A program made the translations under genes and the position numbers. The notes under the pieces are model-generated. The model was not told the DNA's origin. It saw nothing but the letters and a program-made list of their open reading frames with translations, and made no database searches. From Dendrobates tinctorius (taxonomy: Eukaryota): a DNA stretch of 64,000 nt. The DNA lies in assembly GCF_039654945.1 (NCBI RefSeq), contig NW_027361899.1, positions 3,410,001 through 3,474,000 of the forward strand, written 5' to 3'. This document shows, piece by piece, positions 620 to 55,554 of the stretch (positions are counted from its first letter, which is position 1; each line of letters begins with the position of its first letter).

Positions 620-2805
620 GCACTCCCCTGTATACAGAGAATCATCCTGCAGTACATCCTCCCAGCCCCTCTATACAAAGCCCCATCCTGCAGTATATCT
701 TCTCAGTCTCTCTATACAAAGCCCCATCCTGCAGTATATACTCCCAGCCCCTCTATACAAAGCCCCATCCTGCAGTATATCCTCCCAGCCACTCTATACA
801 AAGCCCCATCCTGCAGTAAATCCTCCCAGCCCCTATATACAATGCCCCATCCTGCAGTATATCCTCCCAGCCCCTCTATACAAAGCCCCATCCTGCAGTA
901 TATCCTCCCAGCCCCTCCATACAGAGCCCCATCCTGCAGTATATCCTCCCAGCCCCTCCATACAGAGCCCCATCCTGCAGTATATCTTCTCAGCCCCTCT
1001 ATACAAAGCTCCATCCTGCAGTATATCCTCTCAGTCCCTCTATACAAAGCCCCATCCTGCAGTATATCCCCTCAGCCCCTCTATACAAAGCCCCATCCTG
1101 CAGTATATCCTCTCAGCACCTATATACAGAGCCCCATCCTGCAGTATATCCTCCCAGCCCCTCTATACAAAGCCCCATCCTGCAGTATATCTTCTCAGCC
1201 CCTCTATACAAATCCCCATCCTGCAGTATATCCTCTCGGCACCTACAGTCATATGTAAAAGTTTGGGCACCCCTATTAATGTTAACCTTTTTTCTTTATA
1301 ACAATTTTGGTTTTTGCAACAGGTATTTCAGTTTCATATATCTAATAACTGATGGACTCAGTTATATTTCTGGATTCAAATGAGGTTTATTGTACTAACA
1401 GAAAATGTGCAATCTGCATTTAAACAAAATTTGACCGATGCAAAGTATGGGCACCCTTATCATTTTCTTGATTTGAACACTCCTAACTACTTTTTACTGA
1501 CTTCCTGAAGCACTAAATTGGTTTTGTAACCTCATTGAGCTTTGAACTTCATAGCCAGGTGTATCAAATCATGAGAAAAGGTATTTAAAGTGGCCACTTG
1601 CAAGTAGTTCTCCTATTTGATTCTCCTACAGTTCTTGTTAAGCCCAGAAGTGGCAGGCCAAGAAAAATATCAGAAAGGCAGAGAAGAAGAATGGTGAGAA
1701 CAGTCAAGGACAATCCACAGACCACCTCCAAAGACCTGCAGCATCATCTTGCTGCAGATGGTGTCACTGTGCATCGGTCAACAATACAGCGCACTTTGCA
1801 CAAGGAGAAGCTGTATGGGAGAGTGATGCGAAAGAAGCCGTTTCTGCAAGCACGCCACAAACAGAGTCGCCTGAGGTCTGCAAAAGCACATTTGGACAAG
1901 CCAGTTACATTTTGGAAGAAGGTCCTGTGGACTGATGAAACAAAGATTGAGTTGTTTGGTCATACAAAAAGGCGTTATGCATGCGCTGTATTGTTGACCG
2001 ATGCACAGTGACACCATCTGCAGCAAGATGATGCTGCAGGTCTTTGGAGGTGGTCTGTGGATTGTCCTTGACTGTTCTCACCATTCTTCTTCTCTGCCTT
2101 TCTGATATTTTTCTTGGCCTGCCACTTCTGGGCTTAACAAGAACTGTACCTGTGTTCTTCCATTTCCTTACTATGTTCCTCACAGTGGAAACTGACAGGT
2201 TAAATCTCTGAGACAACTTTTTGTCTCCTTCCCCTGAAAAGCTATGTTGAATAATCTTTGTTTTCAGATCATTTGAGAGTTGTTTTGAGGAGCCCATGAT
2301 GCCACTCTTCATAGGAGAATCAAATAGGAGAGCTACTTGCAAGTGGCCACTTTAAATACCTTTTCTCATGATTTGATACACCTGGCTATGAAGTTCAAAG
2401 CTCAATGAGGTTACAAAACCAATTTAGTGCTTCAGGAAGTCAGTAAAAAGTAGTTAGGAGTGTTCAAATCAAGAAAATGATAAGGGTGCCCATACTTTTG
2501 CACCGGTCAAATTTTGTTTAAATGCAGATTGCACATTTTCTGTTAGTACAATAAACCTCATTTGAATCCAGAAATATAACTGAGTCCATCAGTTATTAGA
2601 TATATGAAACTGAAATACCTGTTGCAAAAACCAAAATTGTTATAAAGAAAAAAGGTTAACATTAATAGGGGTGCCCAAACTTTTACATATGACTGTATAC
2701 ACAGAGCCCCATCCTGCAGTATATCTCTCCCAGCCCCTCTATAGAAAGCCCCATCCTGCAGTATATCTCTCCTCTCAGCCCACTCTATACAGTCCCATCT
2801 TGCAG
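620..2805. repeat. 41-bp minisatellite split by a Tc1 derivative
   Basis: Unit ccccatcctgcagtatatcctcccagcccctctatacaaag; runs ~620-1245 and resumes at 2696-2805. Confidence 0.9.
1246..2695. mobile_element. Non-autonomous foldback Tc1/mariner derivative (two transposon left ends in inverted orientation), copy 1
   Basis: TA on both flanks; TIR cagtcatatgtaaaagtttgggcacccc. Tc1 transposase N-terminal fragments on both strands (RSGRPRK motif; WTDETKIELFG on +). The rest of the DDE domain is missing. Confidence 0.92.
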
Positions 2806-4371
2806 CACATTGCTCCCCTTAGTTACAGCACACACCACGGCCTCCTGGTTTGATCTCCCGCAGTGTAATATGGGGGGCTCCGTCCCTTTCTGTGACATCA
2901 TCCCTCACAATAGAAGCTGTGGTATAGATACGTCCCAGGCTCTGCGCTGCGGTCAGGATGTCAGCGGACATGGACTGCACGGTGCAAGACCAACCAGGGG
3001 CTGGAACTATGGGGCACTTCCAAGAGTAACTAGAGGGTGAACTGGAGGAGATGGACATTAGTATAAGACCACATTGTGATTTTGGAAAAGCCCTTTAAAT
3101 GCCTGTATTTTCAGATAAACACATCTTTTTTTTCAATTGTAATTGTTTCAGCGTTTGCCTTTAACAGGCCCTTTGCTTCATTTCACCGTTTCTGATTGCA
3201 GAATGATCTAACTGAGATTCTGTCAGCGAGCCGGTTCTGATGGAGAGTTTGTATCTCTTTTATCTGCCTTGTTCGAAGATCTTCCATTCTGATTTAAAAC
3301 CAGAGAATACATTAAAGTTCAGCTGAACTGTCAAAGAATTCAGAGATCAGCTTAGAAAAAGGCAAATAAAAGAATTACAAAACTCTCCGCAGAAAGAGCT
3401 CACTGACAGATTCTCAGTTAAATCAATAGCACTGTGCAGGGAAACGCTGACGCGGCGGTGCTGGCGCGAGATCTTATCGCTCCGTGGACCAGCCGTCCGT
3501 AGCTTGATATTTCGCTGACTTCTCCTCGGTCCTGAGGCCACAGTCACACTTTGCAGTGTTTTGTCCCATAGACCACCCAGACTTCACACGTTATGAACAT
3601 CCCCTGCTCGGAGCCCCCCACGCCGCCCCCATAAGCCGATCCTGTATTTGTGTCACGCTCGGAGTAATGGCCTCCGTCAGCCGGCAGCGCACTTTGCTCT
3701 CTCCCTGAGTCGCGCGCTTTTGGCCGCTAAGTATAAGTGACAATGTAATGGGGTCCCGGTAATAAGGCACTCCATTAGTCGCTGACTTTTTGCCGATCTT
3801 TGGGGAGTTTCATCCTCCGGTGGGGGAGGGGAGATTGATTGAGACACAGCGATCGACTTCTGCAATGTGCTCAATCCTCTTCTCTTCCGCGCCTCCGTCT
3901 CCCAGGAGGATCAAGTAACCTGGCGATCAATAGCGCCGGCGATATCACTGCTGTCCGAAAACCCAGACACTTGAAAGGCTCGAAAGACGGCGGAAAAAAG
4001 GAAAGAAAAATCAGCGTTGTGATTCAAAACACAAAAATTCACCAGTGAGAAGGTTTTATGCTTCCCAGTATTCGTTGGCCTTATCCAGCAGCGCGGGGGT
4101 CCCGCTAAGCCCCTGTTGCTTCTGAAAATCAGATTCTAGGACAGAGGATCCGTATGGATGCACCATATGGCGGCACACGGATTGGATCCAGCTCCATAGC
4201 ACAAAGCTGTAGGGACTGCGGAGCGCGGGTGCACAGCCGGCGGCACATTGCTCTGCCGGATCAGAACATCTGCATGAAGCTTCTATGTTCTCCCCGTGTT
4301 CTTATGAGTTTTCCCAAGTTTCCTCCCACGCTCCAAGAAAATCCTGATGAGTTCATAAAAAAATATGGAGA

Positions 4372-5965
4372 TGAGAGCGAGCCCGGCAGAGACCAAGCCC
4401 GGATGAGGAGGCAGAGACACAGCCCAGCAGAGAGCGAGCCCGGCAGAGACCAAGCCCGGCTGAGGAGGCAGAGACACAGCCCAGCAGAGAGCGAGCCCGG
4501 CAGAGACCAAGCCCGGCTGAGGAGGCAGAGACACAGCCCAGCAGAGAGCGAGCCCGGCAGAGACCAAGCCCGGCTGAGGAGGCAGAGACACAGCCCAGCA
4601 GAGAGCGAGCCCGGCAGAGACCAAGCCCGGCTGAGGAGGCAGAGACACAGCCCAGCAGAGAGCGAGCCCGGCAGAGACCAAGCCCGGCTGAGGAGGCAGA
4701 GACACAGCCCAGCAGAGAGCGAGCCCGGCAGAGACCAAGCCCGGATGAGGAGGCAGAGACACAGCCCAGCAGAGAGCGAGCCCGGCAGAGACCAAGCCCG
4801 GCTGAGGAGGCAGAGACACAGCCCAGCACAGACAGCGAGCCCGGCAGAGACCGAGCCCTGCAGAGAGCGAGCCCGGCAGGGAAGACAGAGACTGAGCCCG
4901 GCAGAGAGCCAGCCCAGCAGGGAAGACAGAGACTGAGCCTGGCAGAGAGCCAGCCCAGCAGGGAAGACAGAGACTGAGCCCGGCAGAGAGCCAGCCCAGC
5001 AGGGAAGACAGAGACTGAGCCCGGCAGAGAGCCAGCCCAGCAGGGAAGACAGAGACTGAGCCTGGCAGAGAGCCAGCCCAGCAGGGAAGACAGAGATTGA
5101 GCCCGGCAGAGAGCCAGCCCAGCAGGGAAGACAGAGACTGAGCCCGGCAGAGAGCCAGCCCAGCAGAGAAGACAGAGACTGAGCCCAGCAGAGAGCGAGC
5201 CTGACAGAGAGTGAGCCCGACAGAGAAGGCAGAGACCGAGCCCAGCAGAGAGCGAGCCCGGCAGGGAAGACAGACTGAGCCCAGCAGAGAGCCAGCCCAA
5301 CAGAGAGCGAGCCCGACAGGGATCGAGCCTAGCAGAGACTGAACCCGGCAGAGACCAAGCCTGGAAGAGACCGCAGAGAGTGATCCCAAAAGAGAGCGAG
5401 CCTGGAAGATAGCGAGCCTGGCAGGGAAGACAGAGACTGAGCCCAGCAGAGAGCGAGCCCAGCAATGCGAGAGCCCGACAGAGAAGGCAGAGACTGAGCC
5501 CAGCAGAGAGCAAGCTTGGCAGAGAGCAAGCCCGACAGGGAAGACAGAGACTGAGCCCAGCAGAGAGCCAGCCCAACAACAGAGAGCGAGTCCGGCAGAG
5601 ATCGAGCCTAGCAGAGACTGGACCCGGCAGAGACCAAGCCCGGAAGAGACCGCAGAGAGCGAGCCCAACATAGAGCGAGCCCGGCAGGGAAAACAGAGAC
5701 TGAGCCCAGCAGAGAGCGAGCCCAGCAATGAGAGAGCCCGGCAGGGAAGACAGAGACTGAGCCCAGCAGAGAGCGAGCCTGGCAGAAATTGAGCCCGGCA
5801 GGGAAGACAGAGAGCAGAGATCGAGCGTAGCACACTGAATCTGGCAGAGACCACAGAGTGTGAGCCCAACAGAGAGTGAGCCCGGAAGAAACTGAGCCTG
5901 GCAGGGAAGACAGAGACAGAGCCTGGGAGAGACTGAGCTCAGCAGAGAGCGAGCCCGGCAGAGAC
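4372..5965. repeat. Compound GA-rich minisatellite (57-bp units, then 42-bp units, then degenerate)
   Basis: About 8 near-perfect gagagcgagcccggcagagaccaagcccggctgaggaggcagagacacagcccagca units, followed by shorter related units. Confidence 0.9.
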
Positions 5966-6224
5966 TGGAGGGGTCATCACCGCGGCACAACAGATAGTTC
6001 AGGGCCACAGATACATGGTCTCAGATTTATCAAAGCGTTTACATCATAATTCTGCTACAATTTGCTTTGAAAATCTTTGCAACTTTGTCGTGCTTTCACC
6101 AGTTTAACCAAACTCTGCCAAAATTCGCAGAATACGATGCCACAGCTCGTCTAGTGGTGTCGTTCCTTACGCCAGAAATCTCTGCCCAGTCTCTGATTTT
6201 TGTCACGACACTTCAACCTTGTGA

Positions 6225-6571
6225 AGACAGAAAACGTGTGACCTCGGTCATTGCCAACAAAGGATATATCACAAAGTATTGAGATGAACTTTTGTTAATG
6301 ACCAAATATTTATTTTCCACCATAATTTGCTAAATAAATCTTCCAAATCAGACAAGGTGATTTTCTGGATTTGTTTCCTCATTGTGACGCTCAGAGTTGT
6401 GGTCGACCTATGAATCATAGAATCATAGAATCGTAGAGTTGGAAGGGACCTCCTGGGCCATCTGGTCCAACCCCCTGCTCAAAGCATGTCAGTTACAGGC
6501 CGCTCTCATCTTTATAAGGGGGGGAACTTCTACAATTGGGGGCTGACTAAAGCCTTGTTTCCCCCCCACTG
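6225..6571 (+). mobile_element. Old Tc1 3' remnant (transposase C-terminus plus right TIR)
   Basis: RKRVTSVIANKGYITKY* is a typical Tc1 C-terminus; ends ...ccccactg|TA. Confidence 0.75.
6413..6486 (-). mobile_element. CR1 LINE extreme 3' end nested in the Tc1 remnant
   Basis: Reverse complement reads ...ggaggtcccttccaactctacgattctatgattctatgat, the (ATTCTATG)n tail of CR1. Confidence 0.8.
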
Positions 6572-7294
6572 TATACACTGCAACCACACACAGCGTCTCT
6601 GACCATCGAACCCAGAAGTGAATTAACAGGGATGCCGAGACTGTCCTGTATAACGGACGCTGTCACCCCCGAGCAGAGAACACACGGCACAGTATACGAT
6701 CTCACCGCCATACGACGTGGCCGCGCTGTCACCGCTCATCACATCACTTCTAGATTATTTATTACATTCATAAATAAACAACACAAAGAATCACTGATTG
6801 AAGAATAAGCAGCTGCAATAGATTCATGATGATGTCAACGTTATTGTCATTTTATAAAACTAAAACTAAATAAAATGCGGCGGCGGCAGGAGCTGAGCAT
6901 AATGTTTGGAAACACTGAGCAGAGCGGACATTATATCATGAGATGATTTGTAGCAAAATGTAACAATGATTTACTAATAATCAGAATAACAGCCTGAACC
7001 CCACGAAATAAAAGTATGTGAACCCCCATCTAGGGAAATACAGTATATCGACAGGACGTCAGCCGCACGACAGACAGCAATATTTATGGCAAATGTGGAA
7101 TTTCTTGTTCGTTTTCTTATTGAGCAAGAAATTCTAAAAGCAGCAAAAATACTAAGCAGCAAAACTTTAATAACGGTCATGATCATACACTCACACTCAG
7201 AGACTCGTACATCCACACTAAACACTCATATCCAGGTCTATACTCACATCTATATACTCACCCATACACCCACTCACCATTCCACACGTGCACT

Positions 7295-10021
7295 CACACT
7301 CATCACCCCTCATATAAGCACTCACACTCATCATCCCTCTTACAAACACACTCACTCATCATCCCTCATACAAGCACTCACACTCATCATCCCTCATACA
7401 AGCACTCACACTCATCATCCCTCATACAAGCACTCTCACTCATCATCCCTCATACAAGCACTCACACTCATCATCCCTCATACAAGCACTTACTCATCAT
7501 CCCTCATACAAGCACTCACACTCATCATCCCTCATACAAACACACTCACTCATCATCCCTCATACAAACACACTCACTCATCATCCCTCATACAAGCACT
7601 CACACTCATCCCTCATACAAGCACTCACACTCATCATCCCTCATACACACTCACTCATCATCCCTCATACAAGCACTCACACTCATCATCCCTCATACAA
7701 GCACTCTCACTCATCATCCCTCATACAAGCACTTACTCATCATCCCTCATACAAGCACTCACACTCATCATCCCTCATACAAACACACTCACTCATCATC
7801 CCTCAAACACACTCACTCATCATCCCTCATACAAACACACTCACTCATCATCCCTCATACAAGCACTCACACTCATCATCCCTCATACAAGCACTCACAC
7901 TCATCATCCCTCATACAAGCACTCACACTCATCATCCCTCATACAAACACACTCACTCATCATCTCTCATACAAGCACTCACACTCATCATCCCTCATAC
8001 AAACACACTCACTCATCATCCCTCATACAAGCACTCACACTCATCATCCCTCATACAAGCACTCACACTCATCATCCCTCATAAAAGCACTTACTCATCA
8101 TCCCTCATGCAAGCACTCACACTCATCATCCCTCATACAAGCACTCACACTCATTATCCCTCATACAAGCACTTACTCATCATCCCTCATACAAGCACTC
8201 ACACTCATCATCCCTCATACAAGCACTCACACTCATCATCCCTCATACAAGCACTCACACTCATCATCCCTCATAAAAGCACTTACTCATCATCCCTCAT
8301 GCAAGCACTCACACTCATCATCCCTCATACAAGCACTCACACTCATCATCCCTCATACAAGCACTTACTCATCATCCCTCATACAAGCACTCACACTCAT
8401 CATCCCTCATACAAGCACTCACACTCATCATCCCTCATACAAACACACTCACTCATCATCTCTCATACAAGCACTCACACTCATCATCCCTCATACAAAC
8501 ACACTCACTCATCATCCCTCATATAAGCACTCACACTCATCATCCCTCATACAAACACACTCACTCTTCATCCCTCATACAAGCACTCACACTCATCATC
8601 CCTCATACAAACACACTCACTCATCATCCCTCATACAAGCACTCACACTCATCATCCCTCATACAAACACTCACTCATCATCTCTCATACAAGCACTCAC
8701 ACTCATCATCCCTCATACAAACACACTCACTCATCATCCCTCATACAAGCACTCACACTCATCATCCCTCATACAAGCACTCACACTCATCATCCCTCAT
8801 ACAAGCACTCACACTCATCATCCCTCATACAAACACACTCACTCATCATCTCTCATACAAGCACTCACACTCATCATCCCTCATACAAACACACTCACTC
8901 ATCATCCCTCATACAAGCACTCACACTCATCATCCCTCATACAAGCACTCACACTCATCATCCCTCATACAAACACACTCACTCATCATCCCTCATACAA
9001 GCACTCACACTCATCATCCCTCATACAAACACACTCACTCATCATCTCTCATACAAGCACTCACACTCATCATCCCTCATACAAGCACTCACACTCATCA
9101 TCCCTCATACAAACACACTCACTCATCATCTCTCATACAAGCACTCACACTCATCATCCCTCATACAAACACACTCACTCATCATCCCTCATACAAACAC
9201 ACTCACTCATCATCTCTCATACAAGCACTCACACTCATCATCTCTCATACAAGCACTCACAGTCATCATCTCTCATACAAGCACTCACACTCATCATCCC
9301 TCATACAAACACACTCACTCATCATCCCTCATACAAGCACTCACACTCATCATCCCTCATACAAGCACTCACACTCATCATCCCTCATACAAACACACTC
9401 ACTCATCATCTCTCATACAAGCACTCACACTCATCATCCCTCATACAAACACTCTCACTCATCATCCCTCATACAAACACACTCACTCATCATCTCTCAT
9501 ACAAGCACTCACACTCATCATCTCTCATACAAGCACTCACAGTCATCATCTCTCATACAAGCACTCACACTCATCATCCCTCATACAAACACACTCACTC
9601 ATCATCTCTCATACAAGCACTCACACTCATCATCCCTCATACAAGCACTCACACTCATCATCCCTCATACAAACACACTCACTCATCATCTCTCATACAA
9701 GCACTCACACTCATCATCCCTCATACAAACACTCTCACTCATCATCCCTCATACAAACACACTCACTCATCATCTCTCATACAAGCACTCACACTCATCA
9801 TCTCTCATACAAGCACTCACAGTCATCATCTCTCATACAAGCACTCACACTCATCATCCCTCATACAAACACACTCACTCATCATCCCTCATACAAGCAC
9901 TCACACTCATCATCCCTCATACAAGCACTCACACTCATCATCCCTCATACAAACACACTCACTCATCATCCCTCATACAAGCACTCACACTCATCATCCC
10001 TCATACAAACACACTCACTCA
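7295..10021. repeat. 28-bp CA-rich minisatellite, about 95 copies
   Basis: Unit actcatcatccctcatacaagcactcac with aacacactc variants. Confidence 0.95.
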
Positions 10022-52304: not shown

Positions 52305-54519
52305 CATCAAGACTGGCAAAGAAGAGCATCTTGCTTTACAGTCTGCTGTGAAGTTGAATGTTACTGTATTATCAGTTTTAGCTGGAGCTTTCATGAATGT
52401 GTCCATTTCTACTGCACCGCCTGAGCCTAGATAAGCAGAATTCACACAAGTGATAGTACATACATAAGTGCGATGGTAGATCCAATCTCACATGTACGAT
52501 GTGGAGTAATACATACAAGTCATAGCTTTGGGTAATCTCTGCTCTGGCTCCTGTTAGGGTGAAGGAGTCATCCCATCAGTGACAGCTGTCTGTACTCAAT
52601 ATATGGAATATTGCAACCGGAAATCCATGTTAATAATTCCTGAGCCTGTTCCGAGCCTGACATCAATCTCCCAGCTGTGAGACTGACAGGCGAGAGCTAA
52701 TGGCAAGGATGAAGTGTGAGCATGATGCTGCCATGAACAGCCGGGTGTGTCTGTGGTGACAGCGTCCATCAATATGGAGACAACTAGATGTGACGCCGGG
52801 TCTAGATATAAGGACCGACATCAACCTTAGAAGAAGCACCCTTCACCCAACGCAATCATCTGTGGAGCCGGACGGGAATGGTGAAGGCTGCACAGGGCCG
52901 GTATTACCCATGGGTAAGAGGAGGAGGTATAGTGTGAAGCCTGATGGCCCGGATGGAAAATCACAAGCCCATTCATAGAACCTCAGGAAGTGGATCACCC
53001 CACTCACCGAGAGCAAGGAAAGTGGATCACCCCACTCACTGAGAGCAAGGAAGTGAGCACCCCAATCACCGAGAGCAGGAAAGTGAGCACCCTGATCACT
53101 GATCGCTAGAAAGTGGATCACCCCATTCAGAGTAGGAAAGTGGGTCATCCCATTCACTGAGAGCAGGGAAGTGGATCACCCCTGTCATGATCCACCGCTG
53201 CCACCAATATGTCACGATCCCACCACTGACACGGGTATGTCAGCGGACGGAGGGATGCGACACACTGCCAACACACGGCTATCACAGGCACAGTGGGGCT
53301 TATCTTAGTTATCTCACCACTGGCACCATGTGACCAAAACACAGCAAGCTAATCTCGCTCTAACAATTTATCGCAGGGGGGGTATTTTGGATGCCCCACC
53401 ACTGATAACAACCTTCCAAGAACTGCGGGGATTTATGGATATCCCACTTTCTCAGTTCCACTTTGGAACTCGCAGCTCTTAGGCGCCCCCCTTTACCCTC
53501 AAGTCAGTCAGGGAACTACACCTGGGATAATTGGTCACCGGCCGGTTGCTTCAATGAGGTCTGGCCGCAAAGCACGCTGCAGTGAGGGAATTATAAACAC
53601 TCTGGCCGCAGCCACCCAATTAGCTTATAAAGTCCCCTTCCGTCACAGCCAGCAGTGCCTGGGGTCCAAATCACACTTCGCTGCCACCAGCTACGATTTA
53701 CTTAATCAATGAGTTAATTAAGAGGGTCCATAGCAAACCCCCAAATTAGTAGCAATTATCTTAAAGGCACGTGTTCGCTTCTTAGAGCATGGAGACAGAG
53801 CTAATAAATTTACGGTTTATTCCCCAAAGTGGGGCAGTGATTACACAGGTAAAAGTTGTTACAAAGTTGAGACCTTAGATATGTACATTGCAAATATAAA
53901 ATAACAAGGATTAAAAAAACAGAGATTAACACTTACATGTGCTTAGTTAGTATTAGGCAAACCATGTGGCCGGGGGAGGGGCAGCAGTCACACGTCCCTC
54001 TGCATCTTGTCAGCACAGACTCTGCAGCTTAACTGGGCTGTTTGTCGACTAGCATCCCTTATGGCCTCTGCTGTGTTACATCACAAAAGGGGCCGGCTGG
54101 AGAGGGTCTGCCCCCCTACTCTCTAAGTTGCAATTGGTATCATTTTTCCCCGTTTATCGAGTACAATAAAACAAGATCAAACATACAGTAGTTGTGACAC
54201 ACCGTTTGGGAGTAATCCATATCTCAGTTTCTGGAGGTGTTAGAACTTCGCAAGAGCCACCATAGCAAAGCCGGGTCGGCGCAGACTACAGAAATGTCCG
54301 TTTCATTTTTCTCTTGCGACCGGAGCCCGTGCTAGGCGTATTTTAATATCTCTCATTCATATGCTTGCCCCGCATGGTTCAAACAAAGCCATTCTTTCAC
54401 TTAGCTAATCAACATTCCTTAGCTACTCAGGAAATGGCCGGTGTCCTATAACCAGCATGCAGAGGACACATACACACAGCTGTTAAAGAGGGGGGAGAGG
54501 ATCACATTTGCACCTGTGA

Positions 54520-55093
54520 AAAATGATGATGAATGAACTCATGGAGATCAACATCCAACACTGCGGAGACACCATCACGTTTCTCAACGCAGTGATTCTA
54601 GAGCAATGCCCCCATCCCTTAGGGGAAATATGCAAAAACATGCAAAACACAAGCCGCGGAGACACCATCACATGTTTCTCAACGCAAGCAATGACTAGCC
54701 AGGTCTTTCCCCGGGAAGGAACAACCACGGGAAGGGCAGTCTCCAATGAAGGAACCCACCTATGCCAAAACATGGTATCCGTCCACAGACAGCGTTGAGA
54801 AACATGTGATGGTGTCTCCGCAGTGTGGGATGTTGATCTCCATGAGTTCATTCATCCTCATTTTTCACAGTCTTTTTACTAGGCATTGCTCCTACCAGCC
54901 AGTTTCCTACTCCACACTGATGAGGGGCAATACCCAGAAACAGCTGTCTGTGGATGGATACCATCTTTTGGCATAGGTGGATTCCTTCATTGGAGACTGC
55001 CCTTCCCGTGGTTGTTCCTTCCTGGGGAAAGACCTGGCTAGTCATTGCTTGCGTTGAGAAACATGTGATGTGTCTCCGCGGCTTGTGTTTTTA
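54520..55093 (+). mobile_element. Hammerhead-containing non-coding retroelement (retrozyme-like or Penelope pLTR-like) with inverted 5' half
   Basis: 17-bp TSD cacatttgca(c/g)ctgtga at 54503-54519 and 55094-55110. Interleaved inverted blocks 54514-54590/54792-54870 and 54644-54793/54943-55091. Confidence 0.8.
54905..54959 (+). ncRNA. Type I hammerhead ribozyme fold with palindromic stem III
   Basis: tccaca-CTGATGA-gggg caata ccca-GAAA-cagctg-TC^-tgtgga. All core boxes present; predicted GUC cleavage after 54948. The stem II closing pair is G.A instead of G-C. Confidence 0.8.
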
Positions 55094-55554
55094 CACATTT
55101 GCAGCTGTGACAGGCTGATTTTCTTATAGAATGGAATATTCTGGAAGGTTCCAGCAAAATCATACTTTACAGACATATCTTACATTACAACCTTATTCAC
55201 TGAGAGCAGGAAAGTGGATCACCCAATTCACTGAGAGCAGGGAAGTGGATCACCCAATTCACTGAGGACAGGAAAGTGGATCACCCAATTCACTGAGAGC
55301 AGCGAAGTAAACTGTCCCAGTTGCTGTTCCTTAACTGTGTGACAACAGGGAAATAGATCACTCACATCTCAGTCCTTCCACTGAATATGAACCTTGAGAA
55401 AACCATGCTGTAGTTCATCCTTTAACTACAAGAGGGGGTTAGACTACCCCCATTGCGGTCTCCCTACATACTGACAGCAAGAGAGTAAAAATACCCCAAT
55501 GTACAATCTCTAATGAGTTACAACAGGAGGGTGAGCTACAAATCTGTGGTCCCT

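What the first reader, a model, noticed from the sequence alone, without database searches (positions are those of the whole stretch)
54503..55110. Candidate frog retrozyme: a ~353-nt circularly permuted hammerhead RNA unit integrated with a 17-bp TSD
Seen: in ribozyme sense the right half reads A'(54792-54870)-C(54871-54942)-B'(54943-55091), with the hammerhead spanning the C/B' boundary. The left half, read on the minus strand, is B'-S-A' (54793 down to 54514). B' therefore lies both after and before A', so the template was circular or tandem, with a monomer B+S+A+C of about 150+53+78+72 = ~353 nt. No credible ORF is present. Established: non-LTR retrozymes and newt satellite 2 are monomers of a few hundred nt with type I hammerheads whose palindromic stem III favours dimeric cleavage, and they produce circular RNAs. 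Inference: this is an anuran member of that class, mobilised in trans, possibly by a Penelope-like or LINE reverse transcriptase. I cannot tell from here whether the family is already catalogued.
Basis: partly seen in the sequence, partly recalled or inferred. Interest (0 to 1): 0.9.

Follow-up and report, generated by a model that had tools for sequence, protein, structure and literature searches.

The report
Dead copy of amphibian hammerhead retrozyme
This is one decayed, two-armed insertion of a very abundant 353-base non-coding repeat that carries a self-cleaving hammerhead ribozyme; it belongs to a class of mobile elements (non-LTR retrozymes) already described in salamanders and frogs, so it is well characterised rather than new.

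Summary
Window 54520-55093 is a 574-bp insertion flanked by a real 17-bp target-site duplication; three paralogous empty sites carry the 17-mer once. It has two head-to-head arms of one repeat.

The family has about 18,000 hammerhead motifs (reversed-pattern control 0). The ribozyme is a type I hammerhead with a palindromic stem III and is the least diverged part of the unit. The window copy has C11.1 changed to A (54936), holds a single ribozyme, and is probably inactive.

Among 40 loci sampled:
- None has a Penelope ORF.
- At least 20 have unique 13-22-bp duplications.
- Outer ends fall at two fixed sites, monomer positions ~150 and ~275.
- All 20 clean two-armed insertions use one site per arm.

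This is the Penelope-like insertion signature: partial tandem, inverted 5'-truncated copy, "tail" at one end. One locus has 19 identical units across both arms, which favours a circular or homogeneous multimeric template.

No RNA evidence could be obtained, and no autonomous partner was found. Non-LTR retrozymes derived from Penelope-like elements are published for axolotl and Xenopus, and first readers of this scan flagged the family repeatedly on other DNA of this genome. Verdict: a new member of a known kind, of moderate interest.

The parts
54503..54519 (.). Left copy of the 17-bp target-site duplication (one G>C change relative to the right copy and the paralogues)
   Evidence: empty-site paralogues L075-L077 carry the 17-mer once
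54520..55093 (.). The whole 574-bp insertion (two head-to-head arms)
54514..54793 (-). Left arm, antisense on the + strand: monomer q348-353 + q1-276. Its 3' end is at RT-start site 2 (q~270-276) and overlaps the TSD by 6 nt of microhomology. It holds no complete hammerhead.
54792..54793 (.). Inner junction of the two arms, with 2-nt microhomology (GC). The left arm's 5' end lies at the centre of the stem III palindrome (q348).
54792..55091 (+). Right arm, sense: monomer q198-353 + q1-144. It reads through an uncut cleavage site. Its 3' end is at RT-start site 1 (q~144), followed by 2 extra bases (55092-55093) before the TSD.
54911..54954 (+). Type I hammerhead motif: helix I 54911-16/54949-54, CUGAUGA 54917-23, helix II 54924-36, GAA 54937-39, palindromic helix III 54940-47, C17 54948, predicted cleavage 54948^54949
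   Evidence: Rfam RF00163 aligns the canonical paralogue over model 1-45
54936..54936 (+). A in place of C11.1, which breaks the G10.1:C11.1 pair. This is the only such copy among 131 sampled cores.
   Evidence: no Rfam hammerhead hit on this copy
55050..55079 (+). Internal ~31-nt repeat, copy 1 (q102-132), predicted stem-loop just upstream of RT-start site 1. Copy 2 (q198-227) is at 54792-54821. The antisense copies in the left arm are at 54656-54686 and 54563-54591.
55094..55110 (.). Right copy of the 17-bp target-site duplication

Best explanation
Window 54520-55093 is one old, inactive insertion of a high-copy non-LTR retrozyme. The family is a 353-nt ORF-less unit carrying a type I hammerhead whose stem III is the palindrome ACAGCUGU.

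Shown:
- The family forms tandem arrays of 351-354 bp and is dispersed as thousands of separate insertions with unique 13-22-bp target-site duplications.
- Insertions have variable 5' truncation and fixed 3' ends.
- The ribozyme is the best-conserved segment of the unit.

Inferred mechanism:
1. Arrays are transcribed. Hammerheads pair through stem III as dimers and cut out 353-nt units, which may be ligated into circles.
2. A multimeric or circular RNA is copied by a Penelope-like RT/GIY-YIG protein acting in trans.
3. That protein nicks both target strands 13-22 bp apart and starts reverse transcription from each nick. One strand starts at the U-rich site near q275 (the primary site, used by 9 of 11 single-arm insertions). 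The other starts at the related site near q150.
4. The two cDNAs are joined at their 5'-truncated ends by 0-5 nt of microhomology or short filler. This gives a head-to-head pair of arms with 3' ends outward.

In the window copy the right arm reads through an uncut or religated cleavage site, so its template was longer than one linear cleaved monomer. The C11.1>A change, the single ribozyme and about 3.5% divergence between the arms mark this copy as dead.
For: Family and copy number:
- Period 353 in tandem arrays.
- 18,142 core motifs against 0 for the control.
- Arrays of 10 + at least 11 units and of at least 27 units.

Insertion:
- The empty-site paralogues prove a 17-bp TSD.
- At least 20 other loci have unique 13-22-bp TSDs.
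- Outer ends cluster at q144-157 and q269-282. The same two positions appear as contig break points in independent runs of two organisms (table 7).
- All 20 clean two-armed loci have one end of each kind. That includes 10 of 10 loci that were not selected for resemblance to the window's junction, which gives p <= 0.001 if the arms chose sites independently.
- Inner junctions are at variable positions with 0-5 nt overlap or filler.

No ORF: no Penelope ORF similarity in the 40 loci or in the window.

Ribozyme:
- All core positions are present in 76% of the 131 sampled cores.
- Divergence is 0.9% in the hammerhead against 2.9% elsewhere, p = 0.005.
- Rfam RF00163 aligns the canonical copy full length at E = 0.005 in an 81-nt search.
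- Cofolding two copies gives the double hammerhead with an 8-bp intermolecular stem III. The single-molecule hammerhead fold (-11.0 kcal/mol) loses to an alternative fold (-20.9).

Template:
- L067 has 19 full units in two inverted arms with no variable site.
- Opposite arms of one locus are more alike (98.1% pooled over pairs, a figure dominated by L067; about 96% averaged per locus) than copies from different loci (94.4%).

Literature:
- Penelope-like insertions are partial tandems with an adjacent inverted 5'-truncated copy and a tail often at one end only (PMC8557442).
- A purified Penelope-like protein cleaves and extends both strands and starts at two internal RNA sites (PMC11167929).
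- Amphibian retrozymes have dimer-dependent hammerheads and give circular RNAs (PMC7229834).
- Vertebrate retrozymes derive from Penelope pLTRs (bioRxiv 10.64898/2026.07.22.740005).
- The genome holds at least 5,686 GIY-YIG candidates, with open frames of 839-855 aa.
Against: - No RNA evidence. No listed run is on record as RNA and all were contigs, so transcription, cleavage at GUC^U and circles are unshown.
- No resident Penelope element with a matching pLTR, stem-loop or RT-start site was found among 33 sampled loci. The link to Penelope therefore rests on insertion architecture alone.
- The interval between the two RT-start sites here is about 125 nt, against the 30-40-bp tail described for Penelope-like elements.
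- Frangieh et al. saw no difference in start site between top and bottom strands, unlike the strict one-site-per-arm rule here.
- The sample is 40 loci out of thousands, and the first 13 were picked by similarity to the window's own junction.
- The Rfam score is below the gathering threshold.
- Identical monomers in L067 could also come from a homogeneous source array or from assembly polishing.
Confidence: 0.8

Rival explanations
1. An ordinary 5'-truncated Penelope-like element. On this view the arms are solo pseudo-LTRs of an autonomous PLE and the 353-bp periodicity is a by-product of partial-tandem insertion, not a separate non-autonomous family.
For: The insertion architecture is exactly that of PLEs (PMC8557442). 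The genome is full of PLEs. Li et al. 2026 show that retrozymes and pLTRs are sister sequences.
Against: None of the 40 loci nor the window has PLE ORF similarity. Arrays of 10 to more than 27 ORF-less units exist. 33 PLE loci, including three full-length ones, share no sequence, hammerhead or end motif with the monomer. The hammerhead is full-sized, not the minimal PLE variant seen in L034.
Confidence: 0.07
2. Mobilisation by a LINE (L1-, L2- or CR1-like) reverse transcriptase, with the inverted arm produced by classical twin priming.
For: Variable-length TSDs, 5' truncation and 5' inversion also occur with LINE target-primed reverse transcription. Junction microhomology is present.
Against: There is no poly(A) or microsatellite tail, and the ends are U-rich in the RNA sense. 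The second arm starts at one fixed site rather than at random internal positions. One end of each kind in 20 of 20 two-armed loci matches the PLE 'tail at one end' trait (PMC8557442). Cleavage and extension of both strands has been shown for a PLE protein but not for R2 or L1 (PMC11167929).
Confidence: 0.07
3. A satellite DNA spread at the DNA level, by extrachromosomal circular DNA, rolling-circle replication and reintegration, or by segmental duplication. On this view the hammerhead is a passenger.
For: Long homogeneous arrays and a 6-unit higher-order repeat (L070) look like satellite dynamics. Identical monomers fit DNA rolling-circle amplification.
Against: Thousands of dispersed short insertions have unique TSDs, site-specific 3' ends and variable 5' truncation. 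The hammerhead is three times better conserved than the rest of the unit. DNA reintegration predicts neither fixed ends nor one end type per arm.
Confidence: 0.04
4. A foldback or terminal-inverted-repeat DNA transposon that moves as the whole palindromic unit.
For: The window element is a near-palindrome with a flanking direct repeat.
Against: The two outer ends are not inverted copies of each other (q~150 against q~275). TSD length varies from 13 to 22 bp. Arm lengths and junction positions differ at every locus, and single-arm insertions are common.
Confidence: 0.01

Closest known systems
Axolotl non-LTR retrozymes Rtz_331 / Rtz_353 and newt satellite 2 (Cervera & de la Pena 2020, PMC7229834; Epstein & Gall 1987 as cited there)
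   Same: - ORF-less tandem units of about 330-353 nt, each with a type I hammerhead.
- Helix III is reduced to a very short stem with a palindromic tetraloop, so efficient cleavage needs a dimer.
- Tens of thousands of copies.
- Coexistence with Penelope-like elements.
   Different: - No sequence comparison with the salamander units could be made here.
- RNA, circles and self-cleavage are shown for axolotl but not for this family.
- Head-to-head two-armed insertions with two fixed end sites are not mentioned in that paper: a text search for 'inverted' and 'head-to-head' gave 0 hits.
Xenopus and other vertebrate non-LTR retrozymes (Li, Clavereau & Pollet, bioRxiv 2026, 10.64898/2026.07.22.740005)
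   Same: - Tandem type I hammerhead units found in all seven amphibians sampled.
- Mean consensus length 316 bp in Amphibia.
- Mostly up to 7 units per array, with monomers dispersed.
- Interpreted as non-autonomous derivatives of PLE pseudo-LTRs.
   Different: - Whether this species or family is in their set is unknown, because the species lists are in supplements that I did not open.
- In that study the PLE link rests on pLTR sequence homology and phylogeny. Here it rests on insertion anatomy, and no homologous pLTR was found.
Penelope-like element insertions (Craig et al. 2021, PMC8557442; Frangieh et al. 2024, PMC11167929)
   Same: - 5' truncation and partial tandems.
- An inverted 5'-truncated copy next to the direct copy.
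- An extension ('tail') at one end only.
- Two internal RT-start sites.
- Cleavage and extension of both target strands.
- A hammerhead upstream of the start sites.
   Different: - No RT/GIY-YIG ORF.
- The interval between the start sites is about 125 nt rather than 30-40 bp.
- The start sites are U-rich motifs downstream of a duplicated stem-loop rather than an AC-rich stem-loop.
- The hammerhead is full-sized rather than minimal.
L1 twin priming (5' inversion of LINE-1 insertions; from my own knowledge)
   Same: Both target strands prime cDNA on RNA. This gives an inverted 5' segment joined to the direct segment by microhomology, inside one TSD.
   Different: In L1 the second priming site is arbitrary and the element ends in poly(A). 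Here both priming sites are fixed sequence motifs and no poly(A) is present.

Membership tests
Type I hammerhead ribozyme | Conserved core: C3 U4 G5 A6 N7 G8 A9, G12 A13 A14, A15.1:U16.1, H17 | tested here: met
   Read directly in the window (54917-54923, 54937-54940, 54947-54948) and in the array copies. 114 of the 131 sampled cores keep the fixed core positions checked (CUGAUGA, G12-A15.1, U16.1, H17), and 105 of them also have a fully paired helix II (100 with C11.1, 5 with U11.1).
Type I hammerhead ribozyme | Three helices with helix I open-ended, and helix II closed by a G10.1:C11.1 pair | tested here: inconclusive
   Family: met. Helix I is 6 bp, helix II is GGGG/CCCC with a 5-nt loop, and helix III is 2 bp plus a tetraloop, or 8 bp in a dimer. 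Window copy: not met for G10.1:C11.1, because 54936 is A.
Type I hammerhead ribozyme | Score at or above the Rfam RF00163 gathering threshold (34 bits) | tested here: not met
   The canonical copy scores 20.2 bits, E = 0.0052, model 1-45/45, and only in an 81-nt search. Whole-window and 3.3-kb searches give nothing. The window copy gets no hit. The short stem III lowers the score.
Type I hammerhead ribozyme | Self-cleavage after H17 | not testable with these tools
   This needs in vitro transcription of monomer and dimer constructs. The runs on hand were contigs and cannot show RNA ends.
Non-LTR retrozyme (Cervera & de la Pena 2020) | Tandem repeats of about 170-400 bp, each unit carrying a type I hammerhead | tested here: met
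   Period 353. Hammerheads recur every 351-354 bp in arrays of up to at least 27 units.
Non-LTR retrozyme (Cervera & de la Pena 2020) | No coding capacity, no LTR/PBS/PPT, and TSDs longer than 4 bp where present | tested here: met
   No PLE ORF similarity. The units are fully tiled by the monomer. TSDs are 13-22 bp, and 17 bp in the window, verified by empty sites. PBS and PPT were not searched for specifically.
Non-LTR retrozyme (Cervera & de la Pena 2020) | Expressed as linear and circular RNAs of monomer size | not testable with these tools
   No listed run is on record as RNA and only Logan contigs were available. The 353-nt 'goes back' joint seen in three runs fits tandem DNA as well as circles.
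Non-LTR retrozyme, 'active' by the criterion of Li et al. 2026 | [quoted passage not shown] | tested here: not met
   The window copy has one hammerhead and it is mutated. Other loci of the family meet the criterion (L021, L067, L070).
Penelope-type insertion (non-autonomous passenger) | 5' truncation, partial tandem, adjacent inverted 5'-truncated copy, extension at one end only, variable TSD | tested here: met
   All 20 clean two-armed loci have one q~150 end and one q~275 end. Compared with the description in PMC8557442.
Penelope-type insertion (non-autonomous passenger) | Sequence homology of the unit, or of its 3' module, to the pLTR or 5' region of a resident autonomous PLE | tested here: inconclusive
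   No match in 33 PLE loci (110 kb), three of them full length, using sensitive blastn and fuzzy motif search. More than 5,600 GIY-YIG candidates remain unexamined.

The most novel reading that the evidence does not exclude
The family may record in vivo how a dimeric Penelope-like RNP works. On this reading one RNP holds one circular retrozyme RNA, each protomer nicks one DNA strand, and each starts reverse transcription at its own fixed site (q~275 on one strand, q~150 on the other). Both then run round the circle. This would explain the strict one-site-per-arm rule and the arrays of identical units in both inverted arms (19 of 19 identical in L067). It would also mean the family is active now in this species.
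Probability: 0.3. Interest if true: 0.55.

Novelty: new member of a known kind. Interest (0 to 1): 0.38.

Why it matters
Non-LTR retrozymes are a recently recognised class, and how they are copied back into DNA is still inferred rather than shown. This family is large, at about 18,000 ribozyme motifs. Some copies are young, and its insertion anatomy is unusually clean: two fixed start sites, one per arm, inside a verified target duplication. That makes it a good natural data set for testing the idea that Penelope-like enzymes prime on both DNA strands and may use circular RNA templates. The window copy itself has no likely function. It is useful mainly as a well-delimited example with an empty-site control.

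Tried and rejected
- Rfam at gathering threshold on the window gave nothing. Searches at E<=10 on 1 kb, 101 nt and 3.3 kb gave no hammerhead either. Only an 81-nt search of a canonical copy gave a sub-threshold RF00163 hit.
- Other hits were dismissed as chance: mir-70, Xist_exon1, mir-24, SNORD65 and others, all far below gathering.
- RNA evidence failed. The look-up of sequencing runs returned 22 holders, none on record as RNA. Read laying on four of them used contigs only, so it shows no starts, ends or strand. It does show that the family also occurs in a second coded organism and that contig breaks fall at q148 and q270-274.
- The partner search failed. 30 GIY-YIG loci plus three full-length PLEs gave no blastn, hammerhead or motif similarity.
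A monomer query without loci scored only +/-50 nt around each hit and could not reveal ends.
- A literature search for the ribozyme's letters found only unrelated primer matches.
- An apparent excess of arm 5' ends at the stem III palindrome or cleavage site (7 of 54 arms at q337-353) was not significant in the unbiased subset (3 of 28, about 1.35 expected). I make no claim from it.
- Foldback transposon and DNA-level satellite spread were considered and rejected (see the rival explanations).
Full report
**What is in the window.** There are two long inverted matches: 54666-54793 against 54943-55070 (128 nt, 97%) and 54514-54585 against 54799-54870 (72 nt, 93%). A 17-bp direct repeat sits at 54503-54519 and 55094-55110 (16 of 17).

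On the plus strand a hammerhead motif can be read directly:
- Helix I: 54911-54916 pairing with 54949-54954.
- CUGAUGA: 54917-54923.
- Helix II: 54924-54936.
- GAA: 54937-54939.
- Palindromic helix III (ACAGCUGU): 54940-54947.
- C17: 54948.

**The family is real and the predicted monomer length is exact.** A search of the window's own genome (6.36 Gb, 830 contigs) with 54503-55110 returned at least 225 matches from 1,943 candidates. Some had 352-353-bp spacing. TRF on L021 found period 353, with 2.4 units on one strand followed by at least 6.2 on the other.

I used one natural unit, L021:1660-2012, as reference. It is numbered q1-q353 from the base after the predicted cleavage site. On that scale the window's left arm is q348-353 plus q1-276 (antisense) and its right arm is q198-353 plus q1-144.

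The 32-nt ribozyme core with up to 2 mismatches occurs 9,031 + 9,111 times in the genome. The reversed control pattern occurs 0 times.

**The ribozyme.** Array copies read CCACA-CUGAUGA-GGGG-CAAUA-CCCC-GAAA-CAGCUG-UC^UGUGG, with every core position canonical.
- Rfam RF00163 (Hammerhead_1) aligns such a copy over the whole model (1-45) at 20.2 bits, E = 0.0052. This happened only when 81 nt were searched, and the score is below the 34-bit gathering threshold. Larger searches miss it.
- As a single molecule the hammerhead fold (-11.0 kcal/mol) loses to an alternative fold (-20.9). Two copies cofold into a double hammerhead with an 8-bp intermolecular stem III. This is the dimer-dependent design described for newt and axolotl (PMC7229834).
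- Among 131 sampled cores, 100 are fully canonical and 5 more have a G:U at 10.1:11.1.
- With CpG sites excluded and loci weighted equally, the hammerhead diverges 0.9% from the majority base against 2.9% for the rest of the unit (Mann-Whitney p = 0.005). That points to selection on the source copies.
- The window copy has A at 54936 in place of C11.1, the only such case in the sample, and gets no Rfam hit. It also holds just one ribozyme, so it cannot form the cis dimer.
- The circular 353-nt RNA folds to -121 kcal/mol, z = -3.3 against dinucleotide shuffles. The two copies of an internal 31-nt repeat (q102-132 and q197-227) form the same stem-loop.

**It is an insertion with a true target-site duplication.** The flank is itself a repeat with at least 1,046 candidates. 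Three paralogues (L075-L077) run from the left flank, through a single copy of the 17-mer, straight into the right flank. The inserted DNA is therefore 54520-55093, and the 17 bp were duplicated on insertion. The left copy later took a G>C change.

**Anatomy across loci.** I examined 40 loci. Thirty came, and ten came from the first HHR-pattern hits on contig C3, which are unbiased with respect to ends.
- Nearly all are either one arm or two head-to-head arms with the 3' ends pointing outward. Arms run from 0.4 to more than 10 units.
- At least 20 loci have unique 13-22-bp TSDs abutting the repeat.
- Outer ends fall in two tight clusters, q144-157 and q269-282. Both are U-rich motifs (…GUGUUUUGCAUGUUUUUGCA and …CAUUUUUCACAG) lying downstream of the two stem-loop copies.
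- Overlap of 0-11 nt between the TSD and the element end suggests microhomology-assisted priming (computed).
- Contigs from independent runs of two coded organisms break at the same positions, q148 and q270-274.
- Single-arm insertions end mostly at the q~275 site: 9 at q~275, 1 at q~150 and 1 at an atypical position (q304).
- Every clean two-armed insertion (20 of 20) has one end of each kind. That includes 10 of 10 loci not selected for likeness to the window's junction. If the arms chose sites independently, p would be at most 0.001.
- Inner junctions differ at each locus and show 0-5 nt of overlap or short filler. In the window the junction is a 2-nt GC overlap, and the left arm's 5' end lies at the centre of the stem III palindrome.

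**Who moves it.** No locus, and nothing in the 64-kb window, resembles a Penelope ORF, so these are not truncated autonomous elements. [quoted passage not shown] A purified Penelope-like protein cleaves and extends both strands, starts at two internal RNA sites, and is predicted to be a dimer (PMC11167929).

The genome holds at least 5,686 GIY-YIG candidates, with open frames of 839-855 aa, so enzymes are plausibly available. I could not find the partner. 33 PLE loci (110 kb), three of them full length, share no sequence, ribozyme or end motif with the unit. The Penelope assignment is therefore an inference from architecture, which I rate at about 0.7.

**Circular or tandem template.** The window's right arm reads through the cleavage site, so its template was longer than one cleaved linear monomer.
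- L067 has 19 full units, 9 on one arm and 10 on the inverted arm, without a single variable site. The same units differ by 6.5% from the reference unit.
- Opposite arms of a locus are more alike (98.1% pooled over pairs, a figure dominated by L067; about 96% averaged per locus) than copies from different loci (94.4%).
- This fits one homogeneous template serving both arms, as rolling-circle copying of a circular monomer would give. A homogeneous multimeric transcript or assembly polishing cannot be excluded.
- L070 shows a 6-unit higher-order repeat. That fits either a multimeric circle or later unequal exchange.

**RNA.** The one run search returned no holder on record as RNA. The four runs laid were contigs, which cannot show ends or strand. 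Transcription, self-cleavage and circles remain untested.

**Comparison with what is known.**
- Newt satellite 2 and the axolotl retrozymes Rtz_331 and Rtz_353 are the same kind of element. They have dimer-dependent hammerheads and demonstrated circular RNAs (PMC7229834).
- A 2026 preprint reports non-LTR retrozymes in all seven amphibians sampled, maps them in Xenopus, and derives them from Penelope pLTRs (10.64898/2026.07.22.740005).
- An anuran retrozyme moved by a Penelope-like enzyme is therefore a published idea.
- What this family adds is a very clean record of insertion mechanics: two fixed start sites about 125 nt apart, one per arm. I did not find this stated for retrozymes in the papers I read, though it parallels the known Penelope tail asymmetry.
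- I did not verify the taxon, and I could not check Dfam or Repbase.
- First readers of this scan flagged the same family many times on other DNA of this genome. Those notes are unchecked and did not change my reading.

**Verdict.** The window copy is a dead member of a large retrozyme family that looks recently active. It is a new member of a known kind, and I score its interest at about 0.4.

Noticed in passing
L067 (G000:C3:7801000-7810999), repeat at 2508-10000: A head-to-head array of about 10 units on one arm and at least 11 on the other. The 19 full units show no variable site at all, while differing 6.5% from the 353-bp reference unit (a 351-bp subfamily). It looks like a very recent single insertion and is a candidate for a presence/absence polymorphism test.
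   Followed up: partly
L070 (G000:C3:16000000-16009999), 3571-10000: At least 18 units of 354 bp with a strict 6-unit higher-order pattern: 12 shared variant sites recur every sixth unit, and one alternates every second unit. Only alternate units carry the exact hammerhead core.
   Followed up: partly
window 54230-54519 and 55094-55190: The retrozyme sits inside another interspersed repeat with at least 1,046 candidate copies in the genome, at 81-93% identity. I used it only as an empty-site control and did not classify it.
   Followed up: partly
window 55190-55300: Three tandem copies of a 31-bp unit (90-92% identical), about 80 bp downstream of the insertion. It is unrelated to the retrozyme.
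   Followed up: no
L071 (C139:5848000-5853500), L073 (C32:42669500-42674500), L072+L048 (C78:9826600-9832579): Penelope-like elements with uninterrupted frames of 839, 842 and 855 aa. Several further loci have the same 839-aa frame, and large clusters of GIY-YIG hits lie on C39 and C345. PLEs may still be active in this genome.
   Followed up: partly
L034:44-83 (+) and L055:1983-2020 (+): Hammerhead-like motifs lie next to GIY-YIG ORFs. L034 has a minimal form with an ACGU stem III. L055 has a newt-like form ending CGAAACGCGUC. Neither is related in sequence to the 353-nt family.
   Followed up: no
runs X5-X16 (coded 'organism B'): A second organism holds 25-36% of the monomer's 31-mers at high depth, with fixed differences at q155 and q253 (L021 1814 and 1912). 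The family therefore predates the split of two related species.
   Followed up: partly
L016 (G000:C5:31179320-31182626), 1018-3149: A single-arm array of about six units whose two ends (q277 and q265) overlap by 12 nt of element sequence. No flanking TSD was recognisable. It may be an insertion into a pre-existing copy or an exact multiple copied from a circle.
   Followed up: no
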